A stretch of 64,000 bases of DNA from Lytechinus pictus. Lineage: Eukaryota. Shown piece after piece: positions 1,049 through 64,000 of the stretch. The position numbers were made by a program, and so were the translations under genes. Location of the stretch: the NCBI RefSeq assembly GCF_037042905.1, contig NC_087249.1, positions 52,204,001 to 52,268,000 on the forward strand. The letters run 5' to 3'. The notes under the pieces are model-generated. The model saw only the letters and a list, made by a program, of their open reading frames with translations, ran no database searches and was not told the origin of the DNA. How positions within the stretch are numbered: the stretch's first letter is position 1; every line of letters starts with the position of its first letter.

Positions 1049-1450
1049 TCTTTTGAAACCGACCACCCGCGATACACTAAGTTTACGGCCGATTCTTGTC
1101 GCGGTGGCGAAATAATTTGACTCTTCCAAATCAGTTCTATGAATGATGTCAACATGCTAAATGATCGTCTCACTACTTCCACTGCGAGCTCCGGCACATG
1201 ATTCGACAATTGACGACGAATATTTGTTCTAAAGCCGTTTCCTATCGAAAAGGGGGCGGGTTCGGGTCTAGTCAAAACAATTTTGATAAATTCTACTAAA
1301 TTTTGTACCTTTTCTCCTTCTTTTTCTCTCGTAAAATCGATTCTTACCGTTCCTATGGACACTGCGCCTACACTCCTGCGTGTATCGTTTGTAATACGCA
1401 ATAATTTTAATGCGCGCAAGGTGGTCGGTTTCAAAAGAGGTGGTCTCACT
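1049..1450. repeat. 19-bp perfect inverted repeat; probably the end of a DNA transposon with subterminal GACCACC repeats
   Basis: TCTTTTGAAACCGACCACC at 1049-1067 and its reverse complement at 1420-1438, followed by ggtggtctcact|ata. Confidence 0.45.
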
Positions 1451-1563
1451 ATATTACTAATAATAATATAGTCTATAGGCCTAGGCCTAGTACTTAATAA
1501 CTTAGACCCTTAGTAAAAATATACTAGAGAATCTACGATTTTGTCTATGTGTATCATACAATT

Positions 1564-1652
1564 TACTGTAAAAATTAACTTAGAATGAGATATTATCTTA
1601 AATTCTTATTCTAAGTTAGATGTTATCTAATTCCAAGTTAATTTTTACAGTA
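1564..1652. mobile_element. Miniature inverted-repeat element (~90 bp)
   Basis: 18-bp TIRs TACTGTAAAAATTAACTT / AAGTTAATTTTTACAGTA. Confidence 0.6.
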
Positions 1653-3759
1653 TTGTTGCATTCAAGAAATAAAAGAATAAACTGAATAATTCTTGATTAA
1701 CCCACCTCCGGGTTCGATTCCAGGGCAACCCAATGAATCGACTTTCCCTCTGCTGCGTCCGACATTATTTCTTGAATTAGTTACGCTTCGCCTTCGATCA
1801 AATCGGGGGGAAAAAGGTGGAATCCAACTGAACACAATATTCCAAAGCCTCTTGGGTTGAGAATGAAGCGAACAGACGTGAAATGGTAGCTTGCGGACAA
1901 AATGAAGTGGACGGAAAGGTGTCACCTTTCAATCTCTGCGGAGATCTAGTATTCTACTTTCTAGAAAATATTGGGTGTGGATCGCATGTATTTGCTACGC
2001 ACGAAATGCATATCATCATGCATATGTGTAGTGTTGAGTTTTGTGTTATGGTAAGCTAATAATGAACATACTCACTATTTCTATTGGTGTCATTTGGACA
2101 AAATACTTACTAATAATGACGGGCAAAGCAAGATTTAAACTAATGAAAATTATTAAGATTATTTTTTGTATGACGTGTTGAATAATGTTAATCACCGGGG
2201 TAATCATTTTTTTATATTATCAACTGTTGAATATGATTTTTAATAGGGATACAACAAGCATTCCATAATCAATTATAACAACTAATAGTAGTCTGTAAGC
2301 ACAGACCGTAAGTTCACAATGCCTTGTCGTGCATAATGCCAGGGCATAATGCCATGGGTTGACACACCCAGGTAATTGCGATAATTGGCAACACCAATCC
2401 ATTGGCGGGATAGATCTCAGAGGCCCGCTCAGAGGGTACCACTATACGTTATACCAGACCAGGCAATTTTTTTAATCTAATACTGTGCACAAGTAAGGGG
2501 CACAAAATAGTGCATATAGGGGGGGGGGGGCCGGGGGCGGCGGGGTAGGTCAGTGGTTCTTACGAGGTAGGTGTCATCAACGGCGGTAAAGCTTGTCCCA
2601 TTATAGATAAACAAGGATGCCCGTTAGTAGCGTAACAGGCGGATTTCACCGGGAAAATAAAAAAACGGGAAAAGGAGAAAAGGGAGGGAAAAGGAAAGGG
2701 AAAATGAAAGGAGGAAAAGGAAAGGGAAAAGTGAAAAGAAAACAAATAATTTTTTTTTAATGAAAAGGGAAGGAAAGCGGGGAAAAAAACGAAATAAGGA
2801 GATTTGAGAAAGAACAAATCATTCCGAAATGGGCCTATGTAATGCAACAGCATGATTAGTAAGAAAGGGAAATAAATTAAAAGATTACAAAATGGCAAAC
2901 AATAGCAGGAAATGAAGGTAGAATGGATTTAGCCAAAAGCTAATTTGGAAAACGAAGAAAAGGGACAAGAAAAAAAAAACCTAATAACACGACCGGGCTA
3001 CCGAGGATTGAAAATAAAGAGCGGGAAGAAAGATGGACTGCATACAGCATATCGTGCTATATAGGCTTGCTAAATTTTATAAGCTACGGGCTCTGCCCCA
3101 GACCCCATGTACGCAGTACGTAGGGGCTCTTCATCTATAACCTTCAAATGGCTCTATAACGCCCCTGTATGGACCCTTCCTACATTAAGACTTACGTTCC
3201 ATCACTGGCGTACAGCGGTACAGGCGGGGGGGGGGGGGGTCTTGGATCCACACCCAAGAGGAAATAAAAGAAATTATAGGAGACAACGTGATGGAATGAA
3301 TGAAAAAATGAAATGTGTTATTTGCTGAATATAATGGGAAAATCTGTCACATAATTAGTATTTTAATTTCAATAGGCATTTTTTTTCCAGCTCACTTTGC
3401 TCGCTGGCGACTTTTTACAAATTTTCCCGCGTTGCTATTTGATTTGATTTTTTTTATTGTTTTCTTCTGCATCCATAACATTCGTATAATTAATTTTTCA
3501 TAACATAATAAACATAATATGCTAGCATTTTTGGCATGAATCATAAATAAAGAGTATTAAAAAGATAATTTCAGACAAAAATGATTAACTATATGATATT
3601 CACAATTTGCAGGAGAAGGATTGTCATCATAAGCAGATTGCTTGAAAAGAATGACAATCCCAAACTTATACTAATTGAATTAATTAATACATTTATAAAG
3701 CAGAATGGGCATACATTTTCAAATACGAAACATGAATTCATGCAATATTTTAGTATGAA

Positions 3760-3875
3760 GATGAAGATGATAAAGCTGAGGGTGACGGTGATATGATGAT
3801 GTTGATGTTGATGATGATGACGATGATGATGATGATGATGAAGGCCATGGAGATGATGGTGGTCATGATGAAGAT
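3760..3875. repeat. (GAT)n microsatellite
   Basis: Imperfect GAT run; it explains the poly-His ORF 3589-3912. Confidence 0.9.
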
Positions 3876-3981
3876 ATTGGTAATGGCTAAATCGAAGGAG
3901 GAATAAATTCACGATAAAAAGGATACGACACAGAAATTTTACTTCAAATATTCTGATAATAACATAGATTTAACGTTTGCC

Positions 3982-6900
3982 TTAAATGAGTGAAGAGACG
4001 AAGATTGTTTTACAAGGCTCTGGTAGAGAGTTCCACAAATCTGGACCATGGTGTCTTATGGATCTCTGCGCAATAAGCAATTTAGGGTTGATTAAATGAA
4101 AATTTGAAGAGTTACCGGTAGGGTAAGAATGAATAGATGTATTCAGAGTATAACAATTGTGGAATGAAGGTGGGAGCATGTTATTTACGTACTTAAACAT
4201 AGGTAGTAAACTTTGAAGAGTATTTATGTCAATTACTGTTAGAGTCTTTAGTTTATGGAATAATGGATTTATGTGTGATAAATATTGGGAATCAGTACAG
4301 ATTCGAATTGTTTTTTTCTGTAATAAGTATATTGTATTAATTTTAGTTTTTGCACATGTTGCTCAAACTATGTTGCAATATGATATATAAGGCAATATTA
4401 ATGAATTGTAGAGTATGACAAGAGTTGTATGTGGAATTATGTTTTTCATTTTGTAAAGTATACCAACGTTTCTAGAAATACTAGTAGTTATACAACGTAC
4501 ATGTTCATTCCAATTTAAATTTTCATCTATTGTGACACCTAAAAACTTTGTTTCTCTTTTCCTTTTGAGAGGAGTATTGTCTATGTTTATATTGTAAGGA
4601 AATTCGTTATCATGTGAGTGTGTATGCTTGAAATATATAAAATTTGTTTTATCTATATTGAGTGAAAGCTTATTACAATTAAACCACAAAGATAGTTTTG
4701 GTAATTCACAGTTAATTATATCTACTAAAGTTTCTAAGCTATTATGTGAACAAAAAATGTTGGTGTCATCTGCAAATAATACATATGATAATAAAGGTGT
4801 TACAGAAGTCAAATCATTGATATATTTTAAAAAAAGCAAGGGGCCTAGGATTGATCCTTGTGGAACTCCGCATTGTATTAACTGAAAATCAGAAGGAATA
4901 TTATTGTGAATTACATATTGTTTTCTATTGGACAAATAACTCTTAAACCAAGATAGTGTAATTCCGCGAATTCCAAAATTTTCAAGTTTTTAAAGTAATA
5001 TCTGGTGGTCAAGAGTGTCAACGGCTTTGCTTAAGTCCATGAATACGCCTATTATATGTTCTTTTTTTGCCATTGCATTTGTAATTTTATCGTATATTTG
5101 TATTAACGCCTGATCAGTCGAATGTCCTTTCCTGAATCCATATTGGTTAAAATTTAGAAAATGAAAAGTATCTAGAAACTTATAAAGTCTATTGTAAATA
5201 ATCTTCTCTAATATTTTGGAAATGCTGGGAAGAAAAGAAATAGGCCTGTAATTTGTTATTTCATGCAGATTATCTTTTTTTAAAACAGGATTTACCTTTG
5301 CAATTTTTAGGGAATCAGGACACATTCCGGTGCTAATCGACAGATTAAAAATATGACACAAAGGAGAGGCAATATAGTGTATGATCTGCTTAAGAAGGAA
5401 AGTACTAATTCTATCAATTCCCTGTGATTTGCTTGATTTGAGATTTTTTGTTATTTCAATTAATTCCTGAACATTTGTTGGGTTAAAGAATAAAGAAGAG
5501 TTAATGGGTGTGGGAAGAAATTTTCCAAAATTTTCATCAGTTCTGTCAAGTTTGTTTGCCAATGAGGGTCCTAAGTTAACAAAAAAGGAATTAAAGGTAT
5601 ATCAGCTACATCTTCTGAATTTATCACAACATCATGAGCTGTGAAATTATCTTTGGGTAATATTTTGGGTTTCTTGCCAATCAAATCTTTTTTTTAGTCT
5701 AAAAAATATATATTTTTAGGACGGGTTGTTTTGTCCTTCACCAAACTGTATATTTTTTATTACTTTGTATTTATTTTGTGAGTATTTCCCTCTCATTTAT
5801 TCATTCTTTTCTCATTTGATTATCTGTATTTATACTTTGTTATTTTGTTATTTGTTGTGTTATCTATTTCTTGAGGGGCCCACATTGTACAAGCATTGCT
5901 TTTTAGTGGGTCCCTCCATTTCCATCTTAATTTAATTTCTATTGAAAAATAGTATATATATTTAAAACCTACAATGTGTTGCCCAAATCGTCTAAGTGTT
6001 TTTTTTTTTTTTCACTACATATGTATAATTAATTTTGTTTGCAACGGATACAAATATTTATGTTTTATATATGGTATACAATTTGTTTTTGTTTGATGGA
6101 AGTGAAATAAATGAATTTGAATTTGAATTTGAAATCATTTATAATCTCCCATGTTGCTTTCATGTTTGATTTGACTTTGTAAAGCTTCTCGGAATAAAAT
6201 AATTTGCGAGAAGCTCGAATTGTATTGGTTAGTCTATTTCTATAAGTTTTGTATTTATTTTTGTTTTGAATAGAAGGGTTCTTTAAAAATGCCTTGTAAA
6301 GTTTATTTCGGGTACGTATGGATCTTAAAATTGCTTTAGAAATCCATGGCATTTTTGCCTTCTTTCTTTTGACCAGTGGTATCAGAGGAAATTTTTTTTC
6401 GTAAAATGTCTGCAATTTATTGTTAAAATTTGTGTATGCAATGTTTGAATTAGACTCATGAAATACATCCAACCATTCTTCAATAGCAAGATCCCTTTTA
6501 AACGATTCAATGTTATTTTGAGATTCTTTTCTATACATTTTCGATTTGAGTATATTTTCTTTTGGAATATCATTATCGCAAAATGAAAAAACCGGCAAAT
6601 GATCCGATTTATCAGATATTAACAATCCACTGGTAATATCTATGTTTAATATATTTGAAAAAAATGTTGTCGATAAGTGTTGATGAATGGCTATCAATTC
6701 TGGTCGGTTTATCTATATGGGGATAATAGCCAAATGAATGCATTGTGTGTAGGAATAAATCATGTTCATTATTTTGGGATAACAGGTTGATGTTAAAATC
6801 ACCCATTAAATATATTTGTTTCTCTTCTTTTCTAATAGTATGAAGGCACGTTTCAAGGTCTTCACAAAATAAATTTGCTTTATCATGAGGGGGTCTATAA

Positions 6901-56925: not shown

Positions 56926-58745
56926 GAAGTAGGCTGGCAAAACGAATATCCGATGCTTCACCCCCCCCCCCCATCACAACACAAGACATAAAGGTGTGTG
57001 GTACTTAACTTTGCGGCAATAACAGTAAACAAACTGATCACTGAAAAATCTACATTATTTATAATTTTGGTAAAAATTCGATGAAAAGAATCTCAAGCTA
57101 TTGTTTCATTTTGATAAAACAATAGTATTCATGCCATCATTAAGATGCATTGAGTGAGTTGATATCTCCCCATCTTCTTTTATTTTTCAATTTCAGTAGA
57201 ATCTTCATTATTTTTTTTTCAGATTAGTGAAGGCCTATTGACATTCTTGGAGCAGAAAATTTGAACATCCAAATTCAAATTCGATTTTTAGTTCTAATAG
57301 AAAATAAAGTAATAAAATAATACAAATTAATTTCATACATTTCTAATGATAATCAAAGTGTAAAGTTTACATCTAACACAGAATTTTTTTTGGAAAATTT
57401 ATAATACAGGAATCAGATTAATATGTGCAACGGGAGATTCACTCACAAATAATAATACAAAAGAAAAATATCGGGGATTACGCCATTATAAGTTCATGGC
57501 ATAGGACGCTGAGTAATATATTTTTTTTAATTCTTCCTATATGAAAGTTCAATTGTTTTGCATGTTTTGGTGTTATATTAGTTTAAATCATATCAGGGGC
57601 TGCAGAAGCGGGGGGGGGGGGGGGGGGCGGGGGGGGGGGGGGGCTTTTCCAAATCCGTGTACAAAAACGTGAAAATGACTACTCCTATATCTTTTGCATG
57701 TTCAGACCCGCCCCCCCCCCCCCACTTTGAAAACTTTTCCGTGGCCCCTATTGCTTTTACTTTTCTATTTTCTTTTTACTATCAAAAATTGAATGACATA
57801 CATCTCATTGCAAATGCCCCCCCCCCCGATAATAAATGGTGATTAATTTCATATTCCTCTCTCTTATATGATATCTTCTCCGTTTGCTTTTATTATGCCT
57901 GTAATAAGTGTGTGTATATTTTTGGGGTCAGTTTGCATAATCATGATAAACGGGCGCCCATAGGCTATTGAATTTTCTCATTTCTCACGGGAGGGGGGTA
58001 ATGCCGAGGGTAATTAAATTTAACGAGGCCTCGTGAAAATAAACAACTACATTCTGTGCATATGGAAAATCTCTCAAATCGGCTCTAACAATATATTGAA
58101 AATCTTGTCAGAATGTATACTGAAATATGTCACCCTCATCGCTCTATCATCAGCTCAGCTGAGCTGCGCTGGTATACCATATAGCTAGTTAGTTTCAACT
58201 CAGAACAAAATCAGCCGAATATTCGCCAATAACGTTAACAGCTGGCGCCATTCGCAAGGCCAAGGTAGGATTCTAGGAAGCTCGACAAAGACAAAACGTA
58301 GCCCAAACTGGAATAACTACTCAAAGACAACAAATTTCAAGGTAAGAAAATATATCCTCAGTCAGCTGGTCAGTGTGAGTACCTCGTGGTCAAGAAAATT
58401 AGATATTGTTATTTTATACTATTTTACTGCAAGAATTTGGCCTAGGCCTAGATATGTTAGACTCTAGAGTAGACGTTAATCCCGATTCATTGGCAAAGTT
58501 TTCGTACTGAAATTACCTCGGGTCCCACTCATAGCATTATGTGTGTGCCAATATTTGCGTAATTAGCTCGGCTCATCCTCGCCCTCGGCTCAGCTCAGTC
58601 AGGATCACTCATCGACGTCGATTCAGTAAACAAGGTTATGATTAAGGCCCAGATTACGCCGGGCGTAGCCAGGCGGCTTCTTGAGAGTAAAAATCATTTA
58701 CTAACGTAGGCTTACTCTAAACGAAGCCAGGGAGTCCTTCCTATT

Positions 58746-61700
58746 CACTCTAGGCGACACCGCAATACTTACCCGTGTTAATAAAGTAGGTATGTGACAA
58801 AAAAAATGAAAATCATCAAATATGAATAAATTTGGTATCACTTGAAAGCTCTTAAAAAGACCTTTAAAATGATACCAAGAACTTTAGTTTTCATAAAGAA
58901 ATTATAAAGTTATTCCAGTTTAAGTCGCACATATTCATCCAAATTTGTGGTCATTGTCTTAATGTAAAGTCAATGGAGTACAGAATCGATTTTTGTGACC
59001 ATTTTGTCATTTTTGTGACCATTTTGAACCCAAGTCTTCAACAGGCTCTAACTTCTTTGTTTTTGAGCCCTATGAAGTAATTTAGGTATCAATGGAAAGG
59101 TGAGAGAATACTTAATTGATGTGTATCAATTCATCTAGTAATTTTTCTTATTATGTGTAAAATAATTTCTTCTAATTAATTCTAATTAATTATGCAAATA
59201 ACAGAAAATCACAATTACTTGCCTCTTTTTTTTTGCCAAATGAAGGTGATTATGATAGATAATTCATATAATTTAGTTGGCATCAAAACAGCATCATGTA
59301 GATAATTTCCTAATGAATTTGTCTTAAGTATTGTTTTTGTAATTTCTAATGTATTTCTTTGTTTTTCTGATATAAATTACAAGCTCTTTTTCAACTTAGT
59401 ATTGTAATTTTGTATGTGTTTGTACGGGGGTCCTTTTTTACATAAGAAAAAAAAATATTTTGTACTTTGTATGACCAAATGAAAATATGTGTGTTTTTCT
59501 GATGTATTTTATTGTTTCACCACTTCCTTATGTATTCTATTGTTTCAACAGTTTGTTATAATATGTAGCTTTTGATTTGAGAGACAATGGACATGTGATT
59601 ACATTTTTTGAAAGAATGAGCAGCTGAGTGTAAAATATGTATGTAGAATTGTATGCAATTTATTTCAAGTATCAAGAAGGACGAACATGAAGTTTTAATA
59701 TATTGTATCAGTTGTCAATTTCTTAGATTTGTATACATACATTGTATTACAAAAGCCCTGTTTGAGCTCTCTTTTTAAAGAAAAATAAATTCAAATTATT
59801 AGTCGAATCCAAAAGAAAAGGAAAAGAGTGGTCTATTTCTTTCAAAACAAAGCAAAAAACAACCAGGAAAAATATATAACAAAGCTTTAAACAACAACAA
59901 CAAAACAGACATCAAAGCTCCAAACAAGCACTAAAAACAAGAGAAACAAAAACTTGTACCAATCCCATCCCCATTTTCCAATTCAAAATACAACCCCCAC
60001 CTGCATCCCTAAAAAAAGAAAAGTGAACAAAAAATAAATAGTACAATTAATAATAAACATAAATACAGGACTCAGACCCATCTGGAAATGAAATATTCTT
60101 TCCTCTGAGTTTTCATGTATTTTCTTACAAGAATGAAAAAAAATACAACATAAAATAAACAACATCTAGTTCGTGCATTTGAAAAAAACAAATCAACATC
60201 AACAGAAAAAAAAACACTATAGAATAGATTTTGCATTTTAATTTAATAAGTCAAGTCAACATTAATATTCCACTCCCAAAAGAATCCAGTTTCCAAATGA
60301 TAAAATATGATTCTATAACCTTAGGAGGAAAGAATGTTTTTGTGACAAAATGTATATATTTAAATCAATATCAGAATAACAATCTACGGTAATGACAGAC
60401 ATTTTCAGAAAAAGGTACAATATTATCAAGTGAACAATTTAGATCCAGTTCAATCCAGCATGAACGACTCACTATCGACCACTCCCGTCACCAAGCCCTC
60501 CGCATCGGGTACCGGTAGCTCGACTGCCGAAAGACCGTCGGGAGCCCACCGCATCGGGGAGCTCATCTGGCGAGAGACCGGCTGTGACAAGGGTAGCTCG
60601 CGCCTCTTATATCTGGACTGCTCCAAACGAGAACATTTTTTTTATAGTTTTTTTTTCAATTTAAATACATTTTTAAAAGGTCAAGATACATAATTGGATT
60701 GCAGTTCTACTTACCATTAAAAAATTTCGATCATTTGCGCATCCAAAAATTTGATGAACTTTCAAGCTCCGATATCCACACTTCACAGGCGAGTATCCAC
60801 ATTGAAACTTATATGTACAGAAAGAGCAAGTCTTCAACTGTCTGTATCGAGGCACGAGATTGCATCAACTATGTGCGCATGCGCATGAAACCCCATTTTC
60901 GATGAGCCGCCCAGACAGAGGCGATGCCACTTGCAGCAAACCCGCGCGAAAACCGTGCAGCCAAAACCAGCGTTCGCGATGCGCCCGTATTCACACATAC
61001 CTAAATAAAGTGGGACTCCGCTCACGCGCGTTTGGGCCTCCCTAGCTTAGAACTAAGCACTAATATCACCTTAAAAACTAAATCTACAAGGTATATATAA
61101 TCTATTTTATTTATAGTAATTTGATAATGTTTAAACGGTACTCACCAGTTCTTTTGATGTATTTTCTCCAGAATTCCCACGGATTTGTCCCAAATCTTGC
61201 GACAAACCACGTCGCGGTAGACAGCTGTACATTTTTTTTTATTTATAAATAAAGCGCCCCTTACGATAGTTGTTAACAACGCGGCCAAATCGTTAGGTTT
61301 TTTGCACTGTGTCCAAGGCTTTTTTATTTTGTTTGATTTTTTATTTTTTAATAAATATTTTGTTCAATAGCGATTTTTACGTCAAATATTAAATTTATAT
61401 CACAAAATATTTTTTAATTGTAGAAATATACATAATATTATGCAATAATTTATTCTATATATATTTTATAATAAAATTTATAATTGTTGCGGTCTTTAAA
61501 AAAGGATAGTCGATTGATCAGGTGATGACCACACGTATCACGTGATCTGAAAATCAGCTTCATACCGCTTTGATCGCACTCGACGGTGACCGGACTGACT
61601 GCCAAAAAAAGATCGAAAAATGACTCAAATGTAAGTTTCCCTTTATTTTATTAAATTCAAATTAGGAATAGGAATATATTTAATGGGCAATCTTTTAATA

Positions 61701-61857
61701 AGTGATAAACAAACGAGGACAAAACTCATATTTTGGGAGTAATATCATACTTGGGTGCAGGAAACAGTACGGTTAGAAGTTCTAACCTGTTTTTAATGCA
61801 TTGTCGCCTATGAGGTCCATACATGTTAATGTTTGGACCTCATTGGTACTAGGAGTG
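58746..61857. mobile_element. Unclassified CACTC...GAGTG element, copy A (888 bp once the nested insert is removed)
   Basis: Reverse complement of 61866-62737; flanked by TTCCTATT at 58738-58745 and 61858-61865. Confidence 0.75.
58787..61003. mobile_element. hAT-like non-autonomous element nested in copy A
   Basis: TIRs TAGGTATGTG / CACATACCTA; AATAAAG duplicated at 58780-58786 and 61004-61010. Confidence 0.75.
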
Positions 61858-61865
61858 TTCCTATT

Positions 61866-62737
61866 CACTCCTAGTACCAATGAGGTCCAAACATTGTCAT
61901 TACATGTATGGACCTCATCATAGGCGACATCACTAGTATTTTTGGTTAGAAATCTCTGAGAACAGGATATTTCTATATTATATCACAAGTACAAGCTATA
62001 TTCCTTTCTCTTTATAGTGTAAATGCATCGTTAGCAACAACAAAAAAATGAAAGAAATGAAGGGGAACTTACATTTTCACGGCTTTTTCCTGATTTTCTG
62101 GGCAGTTGCTCTTCACTTCTGACTCGCGATCGAAGCTGATATGAAGATCACGTGATTCGCGTTCTCGTCAGCTGATCGGTTGATTATTCTTTTTGTCAGA
62201 CGTTAATAATATATATTTTATAATGCTAGCATTCATCGCTAATTTAGGTGAAAGAGATTGAAGTTAAACAGCGCCAGGTCGGAATCATAATTATTTTGGA
62301 AGAGTGTATTTATACACTCGATCTCATACCTGACGTAGACGGCGCTATTCAACAAATGCACAATCTTCAATATAAAAGATAAAACAGAAAGAACGCCTTG
62401 AACACAGGCCAAAATGCCTAACGATTTCTCCGCGGCATTAACAACTATCGTAAAGGGCGCTCCATTTATTATTAAAGATGGACGTATAGCTGTCTATGGC
62501 GACAAAATTTGCCGCAAATATTTACGAAGAATTGTGAGAAATGGTCCGAAAATGCAACAAAAGAACCGGTGAGTACCGATTAAACATTATCAATTTATTT
62601 AATAGAACATATTTTATGACTAGAGTTTAACAATGTCTAGATAATATTGCTTAGTTCTAAGCTAGGGCGGCCCAAATGCGCGTGAGTGGAGTCCCAGTTT
62701 ATTAACGCAGGTAAGTATTGGGGTGTCACCTAGAGTG
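61866..62737. mobile_element. Unclassified CACTC...GAGTG element, copy B (872 bp), opposite orientation
   Basis: Flanked by TTCCTATT at 61858-61865 and 62738-62745. Confidence 0.75.
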
Positions 62738-64000
62738 TTCCTATTCATCTGCGTGTACCGCAAAAAACCCTGAAACTTTCGCCCCCGAGATTTCTACTTC
62801 TGTTCTAAAAGATCTAGCTCTAAATCATGTACATGGGATAAAACTTCATTTCCGACATTTCTACGCTCTCGTTATTTTTAAACAAGAATTCATCAAAAAA
62901 ATGAAAAAATATTGTGAAAAGACGGAAGAGACTTGCCCGATGTTTACGCCGCCATCTTGTTTCTTATTGTACTTCCCCAACGTTACGCGACGCGACCGGT
63001 GTTATGCAACAATCCTCTTAGCTCAGCCGCGCTCAGCGAGTGAAGAAGTGATGTATTCTTCGTTAAATATGATGGTTTTAGTGTCATGGCGGAGAAGGAG
63101 GCAACGACAGAGAGAGAGGAGGAAAGAAATGCTATTTGCTCACATTTTGCGAAGGGGGGTTAACAAACGAACAATCACAATTACTGGTAGGGTGTCTGGA
63201 GAAAAAAATTATTTTTCTTATTTCAAGAAAATATCACATTCTATTTGTGAATTTGAAGAGAAATGACCTTCAGACTGACAGAAATGTAACATTTAAAAAA
63301 AAAGTCCAATTATTGGCTGCAAAAAAGAAGAATGAAATTAGGTCAATTTTCAGCATTTCTCTGCCATAGACTGTGTAGTTAAGAAATGGACACACACAAA
63401 TCCAAATTTTTAGCTTCCGAGAGCTGTTATAAATTCATTATTAGTGCCAAAAACGTGTCCATAAAGAGTCCAATAGGATTTTTTATGCTCTTTCTGATGG
63501 TATGATTTTTATAAAGATTTGGAAACCAGATCACAATGAAAAATTGCGACAAAGTGAAAAAAATTGTGCAAAACAGAAATTTCATTTTCCCATAGAAAAC
63601 GCATGGGGAAATGGCAATCTCAACACACACACAAAGAAGGGTTTGCAATTTATCTCTAAATCCTTATTTCAAATAATCCTATTAACTTGTCCTTACTGTC
63701 AAAAGAGGCCCCTGAATTTAATCTTTCCATACATACCAAACAAAAGGTAATAATAAATTCAGATCACATTTTTCTAGCAGCCTGAATTTCCCGAAAAAAT
63801 GTGCCATATTTTCCCCTAAATCAGCCTATTTTATGCTGACACTTTTCAGTGTGGCTTCAGACACCCTATTACTGGAATCTGTACAAAAACGAGCAATGGG
63901 TATAATCAACCCACAATTATCGTATACTGAGGCACTCAAAGAATTAAACTTAGAATTGTTATCCGACCGCAGGAAAATCATGTGTGAAAAGCAATTCCTC

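What the first reader, a model, noticed from the sequence alone, without database searches (positions are those of the whole stretch)
58738..62745. Two opposite-facing copies of one element stacked at the same 8-bp site (TTCCTATT three times)
Seen: TTCCTATT-[A]-TTCCTATT-[B]-TTCCTATT, with all three 8-mers in the same direction. A, minus its nested insert, is a diverged reverse complement of B. Both ends start CACTC but otherwise differ, and TAGG(C/T)GACA lies ~5 bp from one end and ~50 bp from the other. The central junction is a perfect 30-bp-arm palindrome around the asymmetric 8-mer, like a recombination site. The empty site (ggagtcc-TTCCTATT-catc) resembles the junction. Inference: a target-site-specific mobile family that re-inserts at its own target. 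It could be a DDE type with an 8-bp TSD or a Crypton-like tyrosine-recombinase type; opposite orientation favours DDE. No enzyme gene is in this window.
Basis: partly seen in the sequence, partly recalled or inferred. Interest (0 to 1): 0.78.

Follow-up and report, generated by a model that had tools for sequence, protein, structure and literature searches.

The report
Two transposons stacked on one target
Two protein-less "cut-and-paste" jumping genes of one sea-urchin family landed, at different times and facing opposite ways, on exactly the same 8-base target; the family is not site-specific, and the arrangement matches one known from the fruit-fly P element.

Summary
In detail: TTCCTATT occurs three times in one direction (58738, 61858, 62738), bracketing element A (58746-61857, with a 2.2-kb foreign insert) and element B (61866-62737, inverted relative to A), around a central palindrome with perfect 30-nt arms.

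The interpretation mostly fails. About 40 other copies carry 8-bp (25) or 9-bp (6) duplications that nearly all differ in sequence. This is an ordinary non-autonomous transposon family with at least 570 copies, not a site-specific one. The flanks belong to a 337-bp host repeat whose uninterrupted copies hold one TTCCTATT, which gives a true empty site.

B is old (5.5% from its consensus) and A is young (97-99% identical to more than 35 copies). So A later entered B's own duplicated octamer.

This is not a single accident. Genome-wide, 19 junctions have two family ends within 30 bp of each other, against about 0.04 expected, with a peak at 8-10 bp.

This parallels the P-element singed-weak allele and the target-restoration model of Linheiro and Bergman (2008).

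Two things stay open. No transposase gene or superfamily was found. Two other loci also show family ends touching TTCCTATT and could not be read. Earlier notes of this scan do not describe this family.

The parts
58662..58737 (+). Left part of the host repeat H, the DNA that was hit
   Evidence: 1174 BLAST candidates at 96-100%, all ending at 58745. It is contiguous with the right part in uninterrupted copies (alignment A1).
58738..58745 (+). Octamer TTCCTATT, copy 1 (outer duplication beside A's L-end)
   Evidence: Uninterrupted H copies carry it only once.
58746..61857 (-). Element A, a young 'A1' subfamily copy. L-end at 58746, R-end at 61857, inverted relative to B.
   Evidence: Ends seen. 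Body 61003-61857 is 97-99% identical to more than 35 other copies, with 868 candidates.
58787..61003 (+). Unrelated 2.2-kb non-coding repeat ('N' family) nested in A. Ends TAGGTATGTG / CACATACCTA.
   Evidence: N-family hits start at query 41-42 and end near 61003 (588-731 candidates, 92-100%). No other copy joins it to A's L-end. The exact duplication (AATAAAG or AATAAAGT) is ambiguous.
61802..61857 (-). A's R-end: tip CACTCCTAG, a hairpin with a stem of about 15 bp, and the 9-mer TAGGCGACA
   Evidence: (pairs I17, I19).
61828..61895 (.). Central palindrome: two R-end tips with perfect 30-nt arms around the octamer
   Evidence: (pair I6), checked by eye.
61858..61865 (+). Octamer TTCCTATT, copy 2 (shared by A and B)
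61866..62737 (+). Element B, an older 872-bp 'B' subfamily copy. R-end at 61866, L-end at 62737.
   Evidence: 920 candidates. 94.5% identical to the consensus of 41 copies, many of which are 99.5-99.9%.
62738..62745 (+). Octamer TTCCTATT, copy 3 (outer duplication beside B's L-end)
62746..62998 (+). Right part of the host repeat H
   Evidence: 2222 BLAST candidates at 93-98%, starting at the octamer.

Best explanation
A and B are two non-autonomous members of one cut-and-paste DNA transposon family. The family has asymmetric ends: R-end CACTCCTAGTACC..., L-end CACTCTAGGCGAC.... An unidentified transposase, acting in trans, makes staggered cuts 8 bp apart, sometimes 9.

Proposed order of events:
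1. B inserted into the single TTCCTATT of a copy of host repeat H and duplicated that octamer.
2. Much later, a young A1 copy inserted in the opposite orientation into the left-hand octamer. It was cut at the same two positions, which produced the third octamer and the R-end/R-end palindrome.
3. An unrelated 2.2-kb element then landed inside A.

The exact re-use is not sequence specificity. New insertions of this family are drawn to the few bases beside, or just inside, a resident end, most often to the resident's own duplication. The likely cause is either transposase bound at the resident end capturing nearby target DNA, or the resident tip completing a preferred target shape.

Shown: the anatomy, the empty site, the variable duplications, the age difference and the genome-wide clustering. 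Inferred: the DDE chemistry and the cause of the attraction.
For: - Variable duplications: 25 copies with 8 bp and 6 with 9 bp, with many different sequences (one 8-mer, GGGCTTGG, recurs at two unrelated loci).
- Empty site: uninterrupted H copies read ..GGGAGTCC TTCCTATT CACCTA.. with one octamer. In nine listed loci the left and right H hits overlap by 6-8 nt, about the length of the octamer.
- Ages: B is 5.5% from its consensus, with 34 private differences. A is 97-99% identical to many copies.
- Independent recurrences. At C16:27565767, GTCAGGGG occurs three times; the older copy has 23 private differences, the younger has 5, and none are shared. At C5:9546970 the second copy used TCGGGCAC, made of 5 bp of the first duplication plus the resident's first 3 bp. 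At C10:29415182 a copy inserted 2 bp inside a resident tip.
- Genome-wide: 19 independent junctions of two outward-facing ends 30 bp or less apart, against 0.01-0.15 expected. Seven have spacers of 8-10 bp (P = 0.0014).
- Precedent: Linheiro and Bergman 2008 (PMC2577343) predict inverted same-site double insertions 8 bp apart. They cite the P-element singed-weak allele.
Against: - No transposase gene is linked to the family, so DDE chemistry is inferred only from the duplications.
- Sites flanking 22 ordinary insertions show no GTG...CAC motif. The 'tip completes the target' version therefore has no general support.
- Spacers from 11 to 27 bp are also common, so the attraction is regional and not limited to the duplication.
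- The order of A and B rests on divergence from relatives, not on an allele that lacks A.
- Reads could not be used.
- Two other loci with family ends on TTCCTATT hint at some sequence preference that this account does not predict.
Confidence: 0.78

Rival explanations
1. Sequence-specific targeting. The octamer in its host-repeat context would be a preferred landing site that is hit again and again, regardless of any resident copy.
For: Family ends abut TTCCTATT at C5:35307537, C5:35310693 and C11:6260628. At C5:35307537 the octamer is followed by CACCTA, the reading of the uninterrupted H copy in L043. The H flanks (..AGGGAGTC C and CAC-CTA) loosely resemble family tips.
Against: - Only these loci, out of roughly 1000-2000 H copies, are occupied.
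- One search finds the canonical junction (octamer followed by CACTC...) only in the window.
- 30 other duplications are unrelated to TTCCTATT and favour G at position 1 (14 of 22), never T.
- Stacks also occur on other octamers.
- H shows no significant similarity to the family ends.
Confidence: 0.12
2. The 4-kb unit is one palindromic (foldback or composite) transposon with L-ends at both outer borders. It would have inserted as a whole, making only the outer octamers.
For: The outer ends form a 45-nt inverted repeat at 87% and are flanked by a direct 8-bp repeat.
Against: - The central spacer equals the flanking duplication. For an imported unit that has a chance of about 1 in 65,536.
- The halves belong to subfamilies of very different age.
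- The R-end/octamer/R-end junction occurs nowhere else in canonical form.
Confidence: 0.03
3. The stack arose by repair or recombination, not by a second integration. Examples: replacement of an earlier resident during gap repair, or ectopic conversion between host-repeat copies.
For: The two halves of the C5:9546970 dimer share 71 derived differences and differ at only 3, so conversion between arms does happen. The inverted octamer at C5:35.31 Mb fits a flip of the centre by arm-to-arm recombination.
Against: Recombination does not create a third flush copy of the octamer. A and B are only about 74% alike, which is poor substrate. The C16 stack has two copies with no shared derived changes.
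Confidence: 0.04
4. Assembly artefact: a false inverted join at a repeat.
For: Palindromic junctions are hard to assemble.
Against: The arms differ strongly beyond 30 nt. The flanks match the two halves of one host repeat exactly at the octamer. Analogous junctions occur at 18 other loci.
Confidence: 0.03

Closest known systems
Drosophila P-element double insertion at singed (singed-weak; Roiha, Rubin and O'Hare 1988, as cited in PMC2577343), with the staggered-cut palindromic target model of Linheiro and Bergman 2008
   Same: Two defective copies of one family in inverted orientation, separated by exactly the 8-bp duplication. Both also show short terminal repeats with internal binding motifs at unequal distances from the two ends, GC-rich targets, and insertion beside pre-existing copies.
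   Different: - This family sits in a sea urchin, and its tips are CAC..., not CATG....
- Duplications are 8 or 9 bp.
- Tandem stacks occur as well as inverted ones.
- No P-type excision scars were found.
- No P-like gene lies near any listed copy.
- The flanks of ordinary targets do not mimic the tips.
Double-Ds and closely linked Ac/Ds pairs in maize (hAT). Source: my own knowledge and PMC7584900.
   Same: 8-bp duplications, local re-insertion that produces paired elements, and pairs that later drive rearrangements.
   Different: Double-Ds is one copy inside another, not two copies flush on one duplication. The hAT target pattern and tip motif are not met here.
IS30-type targeting of its own inverted repeats in bacteria
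   Same: A transposase that prefers the ends of a resident copy as its target, giving abutted ends with a short spacer.
   Different: It is prokaryotic, has a 2-bp spacer and goes through circle or dimer intermediates. No evidence for such intermediates was found here.
Helitron2/Helentron ends (own knowledge)
   Same: Asymmetric ends. One end repeats, further inside and behind a hairpin, a motif found at the tip of the other end.
   Different: Helitrons make no target duplication. This family makes clean 8- or 9-bp duplications, confirmed by an empty site.

Membership tests
Class II cut-and-paste (TIR/DDE-type) transposon, non-autonomous | Copies flanked by a fixed-length duplication whose sequence varies between copies | tested here: met
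   25 copies with 8 bp and 6 with 9 bp, of many different sequences.
Class II cut-and-paste (TIR/DDE-type) transposon, non-autonomous | An empty site with a single copy of the duplicated bases | tested here: met
   Uninterrupted host-repeat copies carry one TTCCTATT.
Class II cut-and-paste (TIR/DDE-type) transposon, non-autonomous | Terminal inverted repeats | tested here: inconclusive
   Only CACTC (plus TAG) is shared at the tips. A 9-mer, TAGGCGACA, is inverted at 5 nt versus about 50 nt from the ends.
Class II cut-and-paste (TIR/DDE-type) transposon, non-autonomous | A related autonomous copy that encodes the transposase | tested here: inconclusive
   None was found. The A, B, C and D types show no coding potential. 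Profile hits do not lie near the listed ends.
Site-specific element (Crypton-like or other tyrosine-recombinase element, or target-specific DDE element) | All copies sit in the same target sequence | tested here: not met
   Flanks differ between nearly all copies.
P superfamily | 7-8-bp duplication and a GC-rich target | tested here: met
   Mostly 8 bp. Duplications are 56% GC, in a window whose 2-kb bins run 29-46% GC. They often start GGC or GTC.
P superfamily | Excision scars that keep 10-20 nt of each end | tested here: not met
   A search for 10 nt of the R-end followed within 30 nt by 8 nt of the L-end found no match.
P superfamily | P-type (THAP / RNase H-like) transposase between family ends | tested here: inconclusive
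   41 PF21787 hits. None is closer than about 13 kb (two weak hits) to any of the 100 listed R-ends, which cover C1 to C3:31 Mb only.
hAT superfamily | 8-bp duplication with the nTnnnnAn pattern and YARNG tips | tested here: not met
   T at position 2 in 6 of 22 and A at position 7 in 8 of 22, both at background level. Tips are CACTC.
hAT superfamily | hAT transposase near family ends | tested here: inconclusive
   62 PF05699 hits, none near the listed ends.
Zisupton / KDZ | 8-bp duplication with a KDZ transposase | tested here: inconclusive
   Zisupton makes 8-bp duplications (PMC12730594). The genome has only one weak KDZ locus, 700 kb from any listed end.
MULE / Mutator | 8-10-bp duplication, G-rich tips, MULE transposase | tested here: inconclusive
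   The 8/9-bp variation fits, but CAC tips do not. None of the 17 PF10551 hits lies in the part of the genome where ends were listed.
Helitron2 / Helentron | No target duplication | tested here: not met
   Clean duplications and an empty site.

The most novel reading that the evidence does not exclude
The family's still unidentified transposase may use a resident end as a landing pad. Integration would be guided to a zone from about 10 bp inside to about 27 bp outside a resident tip, with a mode on the resident's own duplication.

The resulting stacks would then evolve further:
- the centre flips by arm-to-arm recombination (C5:35.31 Mb);
- arms are homogenised into near-perfect palindromes (C5:9546970);
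- tandem stacks grow into arrays (C5:23397730);
- some head-to-head pairs become new foldback elements that move as units (a related palindromic core recurs at four loci).

A tip-like site in the host repeat H would act as a decoy hot spot.
Probability: 0.3. Interest if true: 0.6.

Novelty: new member of a known kind. Interest (0 to 1): 0.38.

Why it matters
This is a natural, datable example outside Drosophila of a same-site double insertion. It comes with a paralogous empty site and genome-wide numbers showing that resident ends attract new copies about a thousand-fold over chance.

Such stacks create long palindromes and tandem pairs. These are known seeds of rearrangement, of foldback elements and of satellite arrays. 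The family could therefore serve as a model for how transposon pile-ups form and evolve.

On the practical side, it removes a false lead: there is no new site-specific recombinase element here.

Tried and rejected
Rejected readings:
- Strict site specificity: flanks vary.
- One palindromic element: halves differ in age and the junction is unique.
- Helitron-like reading of the asymmetric ends: real duplications exist.
- Homology between the host repeat H and the family ends: alignment scores are at shuffle level.
- A coding exon in B (ATG...GT at 62414-62569): the B consensus has a stop codon there.

Hunt for the autonomous copy, all without result:
- The C type (2.5 kb, L045:112-2647) and the D type (over 1.5 kb) hold only low-complexity ORFs.
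- P, KDZ, hAT and MULE profile hits were compared by position with listed ends, with no link.
- P-type excision scars: none.
- Literature search for the tip sequences: nothing relevant.

Steps I could not take:
- Roiha et al. 1988 and Yuan and Wessler 2011 are not held. The singed-weak facts are cited second-hand from PMC2577343.
Full report
**Observation.** The region reads exactly as described. TTCCTATT lies on the + strand at 58738, 61858 and 62738. The octamer itself is not rare (7 in the window, 5.1 expected). What counts is that each copy sits flush against an element end.

Element A spans 58746-61857 and element B spans 61866-62737. A's left end and B's right end are reverse complements over 45 nt (87%). 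The two inner ends form a palindrome whose last 30 nt are perfect.

Both kinds of end begin with CACTC. I call CACTCTAGGCGAC... the L-end and CACTCCTAGTACC... the R-end. The 9-mer TAGGCGACA follows the L-end tip directly. In the R-end it lies about 50 nt in, behind a hairpin with a stem of about 15 bp. No ORF of 70 aa or more lies in A or B, and the insert holds only one of 87 aa.

**The family.** The window belongs to an 812-Mb genome. Earlier notes of this scan call it the sea urchin Lytechinus pictus; I did not verify the species.

B has 920 BLAST candidates. The first 23 nt of the R-end occur 570 times exactly. Several length classes share the ends:
- B type, 877 bp.
- A type, about 880 bp. 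This includes a young 'A1' group with 868 candidates.
- C type, 2.5 kb (L045:112-2647).
- D type, over 1.5 kb.

None shows coding potential.

In 41 B-type copies with flanks, 25 have a perfect 8-bp duplication and 6 a perfect 9-bp one. Their sequences are many and varied; only GGGCTTGG recurs, at two unrelated loci. The family is therefore not site-specific.

There is a mild preference. Duplications are 56% GC, in a window whose 2-kb bins run 29-46% GC. Position 1 is G in 14 of 22 independent sites and never T (P = 3e-6). TTCCTATT does not fit that preference. The hAT pattern nTnnnnAn is absent.

**Empty site.** The DNA on both sides of the stack is itself a repeat, which I call H. It is 337 bp in two parts, 58662-58745 and 62738-62998. 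BLAST candidates number 1174 for the left part and 2222 for the right.

In nine listed loci the left and right hits overlap by 6-8 nt, about the length of the octamer. Two uninterrupted H copies that I hold (L043:2634-2965, L032:2758-3039) were aligned. The L043 copy reads ..GGGAGTCC TTCCTATT CACCTA.. with one octamer. The octamer is therefore a genuine target-site duplication.

H has no significant similarity to the family ends.

**Order of events.**
- B is 94.5% identical to the consensus of its subfamily, whereas many members are 99.5-99.9%. It has 34 private differences even against its closest relatives.
- A's body (61003-61857) is 97-99% identical to more than 35 copies.
- So B is the older resident. 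A entered later, in the opposite orientation, cut at the same two positions of the left-hand octamer.
- The 2.2-kb insert in A belongs to an unrelated family with ends TAGGTATGTG / CACATACCTA and 588-731 candidates. No other copy is joined to A's L-end, so it came last. Its exact duplication is ambiguous, because other copies also match through part of the right-hand AATAAAGT repeat.

**Is stacking a one-off?** No.
- At C16:27565767, GTCAGGGG occurs three times around two copies joined L-end to L-end. One copy has 23 private differences, the other 5, and none are shared.
- At C5:9546970 a second copy used the target TCGGGCAC. That is five bases of the first duplication plus the first three bases of the resident R-end. 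This reading reproduces all three junctions without a mismatch. Its two arms share 71 derived differences and differ at only 3. They are either sister copies or have been homogenised.
- At C10:29415182 an A-type copy sits in the 8-mer GCCTAGAG, 2 bp inside the tip of a C-type copy. Two C-type copies there are in tandem, 8 bp apart.

A degenerate pattern for any two outward-facing ends 0-30 bp apart finds 17 sites. With two mismatches allowed it finds a few more. That gives 19 independent junctions, against 0.01-0.15 expected for 1200-4000 randomly placed ends.

Spacers in inverted pairs are 5, 8, 8, 9, 9, 13, 15 and 20 bp. Spacers in tandem pairs are 0, 9, 9, 10, 18, 19, 21, 23, 24, 24 and 27 bp. 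Seven of the 19 fall at 8-10 bp (P = 0.0014). New copies are thus drawn to the neighbourhood of a resident end, with a mode on the resident's own duplication.

**Mechanism.**
- Shown: staggered 8- or 9-bp target cuts, two sequential integrations, and end-proximal clustering.
- Inferred: a DDE transposase acting in trans, and the cause of the attraction.

Two causes are plausible. Transposase bound to the resident end could capture nearby target DNA. Alternatively, the model of Linheiro and Bergman (PMC2577343) could apply. In that model the tips of an inserted element restore the destroyed target motif, so the site stays a hot spot. It predicts inverted double insertions exactly 8 bp apart, as in the P-element singed-weak allele.

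The second cause lacks general support here. The flanks of 22 ordinary targets show no GTG...CAC pattern.

**Superfamily.** Unresolved.
- P-like features: 8-bp duplications, GC-rich targets often starting GGC or GTC, and unequal spacing of an internal motif at the two ends.
- Against P: no scars keeping both tips were found. None of the 41 P-type hits lies closer than about 13 kb (two weak hits) to the 100 R-ends that the tool listed, which cover C1 to C3:31 Mb only.
- hAT (62 hits), KDZ/Zisupton (one weak locus) and MULE (17 hits, none in the listed part of the genome) gave no link either.
- Merlin elements of this genome have GG tips according to earlier notes, which I did not check.

**Unexplained.** Family ends touch the same octamer elsewhere.
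- At C5:35310693 the sequence runs R-end, C plus TTCCTATT, R-end.
- 3158 bp away on the other strand (C5:35307537) it runs L-end, TTCCTATT, CACCTA. That is how the right part begins in the uninterrupted H copy of L043.
- At C11:6260628 a C-type L-end is followed by TTCCTATT.

The first two fit a second stack in another H copy, made with a 9-bp cut, whose centre was later flipped by recombination between the inverted arms. The partner junctions are not canonical, however. I left that step out. They leave room for a moderate hot spot at this site of H.

**Verdict.** Site specificity is refuted. The stack is a sea-urchin counterpart of a known P-element phenomenon, found in an uncharacterised non-autonomous family. 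The quantitative evidence that resident ends attract new insertions is useful. Interest is moderate.

Noticed in passing
window 58662-58745 + 62738-62998; L043:2634-2965; L032:2758-3039: Host repeat H is about 337 bp with 1000-2200 candidates. It exists in at least two variants just after the octamer (CATCTGCG... and CACCTACA...). It is often found as adjacent inverted pairs, for example at C18:20262648-20263125 and C1:12040144-12040616. Its nature (SINE or MITE) was not determined.
   Followed up: partly
window 58787-61003: The 2.2-kb non-coding 'N' family has ends TAGGTATGTG / CACATACCTA. The window copy lacks about 250 bp that other copies have between query positions 1454 and 1455. Other copies also match 4-11 nt past the apparent right end, so its duplication (7 or 8 bp, AATAAAG or AATAAAGT) is ambiguous.
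   Followed up: partly
G000 C5:35307537-35310747 and C11:6260628: These are further places where family ends abut TTCCTATT. At C5 the two octamers point in opposite directions, 3158 bp apart. This may be a second stack in another H copy with a flipped centre.
   Followed up: partly
L032 (C5:9546110-9547868): A 1.76-kb near-perfect palindrome made of two copies that differ at 3 positions and share 71 derived changes, with a 5-nt centre.
   Followed up: yes
L025/L026 (C6:7042524-7045417); L038/L039 (C5:23396868-23399523): Tandem arrays of family copies. One has three B copies with 132-bp spacers and hybrid flanks, which fits unequal crossing-over between two nearby insertions. The other has at least four A-type copies with a period of 888 bp and a 10-nt spacer.
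   Followed up: partly
G000 C2:53926593, C25:978991, C3:27957873, C6:20519961: A different repeat has a core made of two R-end-like tips (CACTCCTAGTAACAAT, one mismatch from this family) facing outward around a 16-21-nt centre. It may be a head-to-head pair that now spreads as one unit.
   Followed up: no
G000 C2:61159836-62485189: Eleven exact R-ends, all on the + strand, lie within 1.3 Mb. This looks like a duplicated or arrayed region.
   Followed up: no
L017 about 1491-1510; L036 about 2385-2400: Short tip duplications: a 10-nt repeat of the L-end tip (GCCTAGAGTG / CCCTAGAGTG) and a 6-nt repeat inside an R-end tip. A similar case at C10:29415182 turned out to be an insertion 2 bp inside a tip. 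These two remain unexplained.
   Followed up: partly
L010 (C16:24407545-24409298); L023 (C10:29411926-29412802): B-type copies nested inside another B copy (duplication GTATAAAT) and inside a C-type copy (9-bp duplication GAAAAGACC).
   Followed up: yes
window 63088-63186: A possible first exon just right of H: ATG GCG GAG AAG... running to a GT donor. The GCCGCCATCTTG motif upstream lies inside H, so it is not a unique promoter.
   Followed up: no
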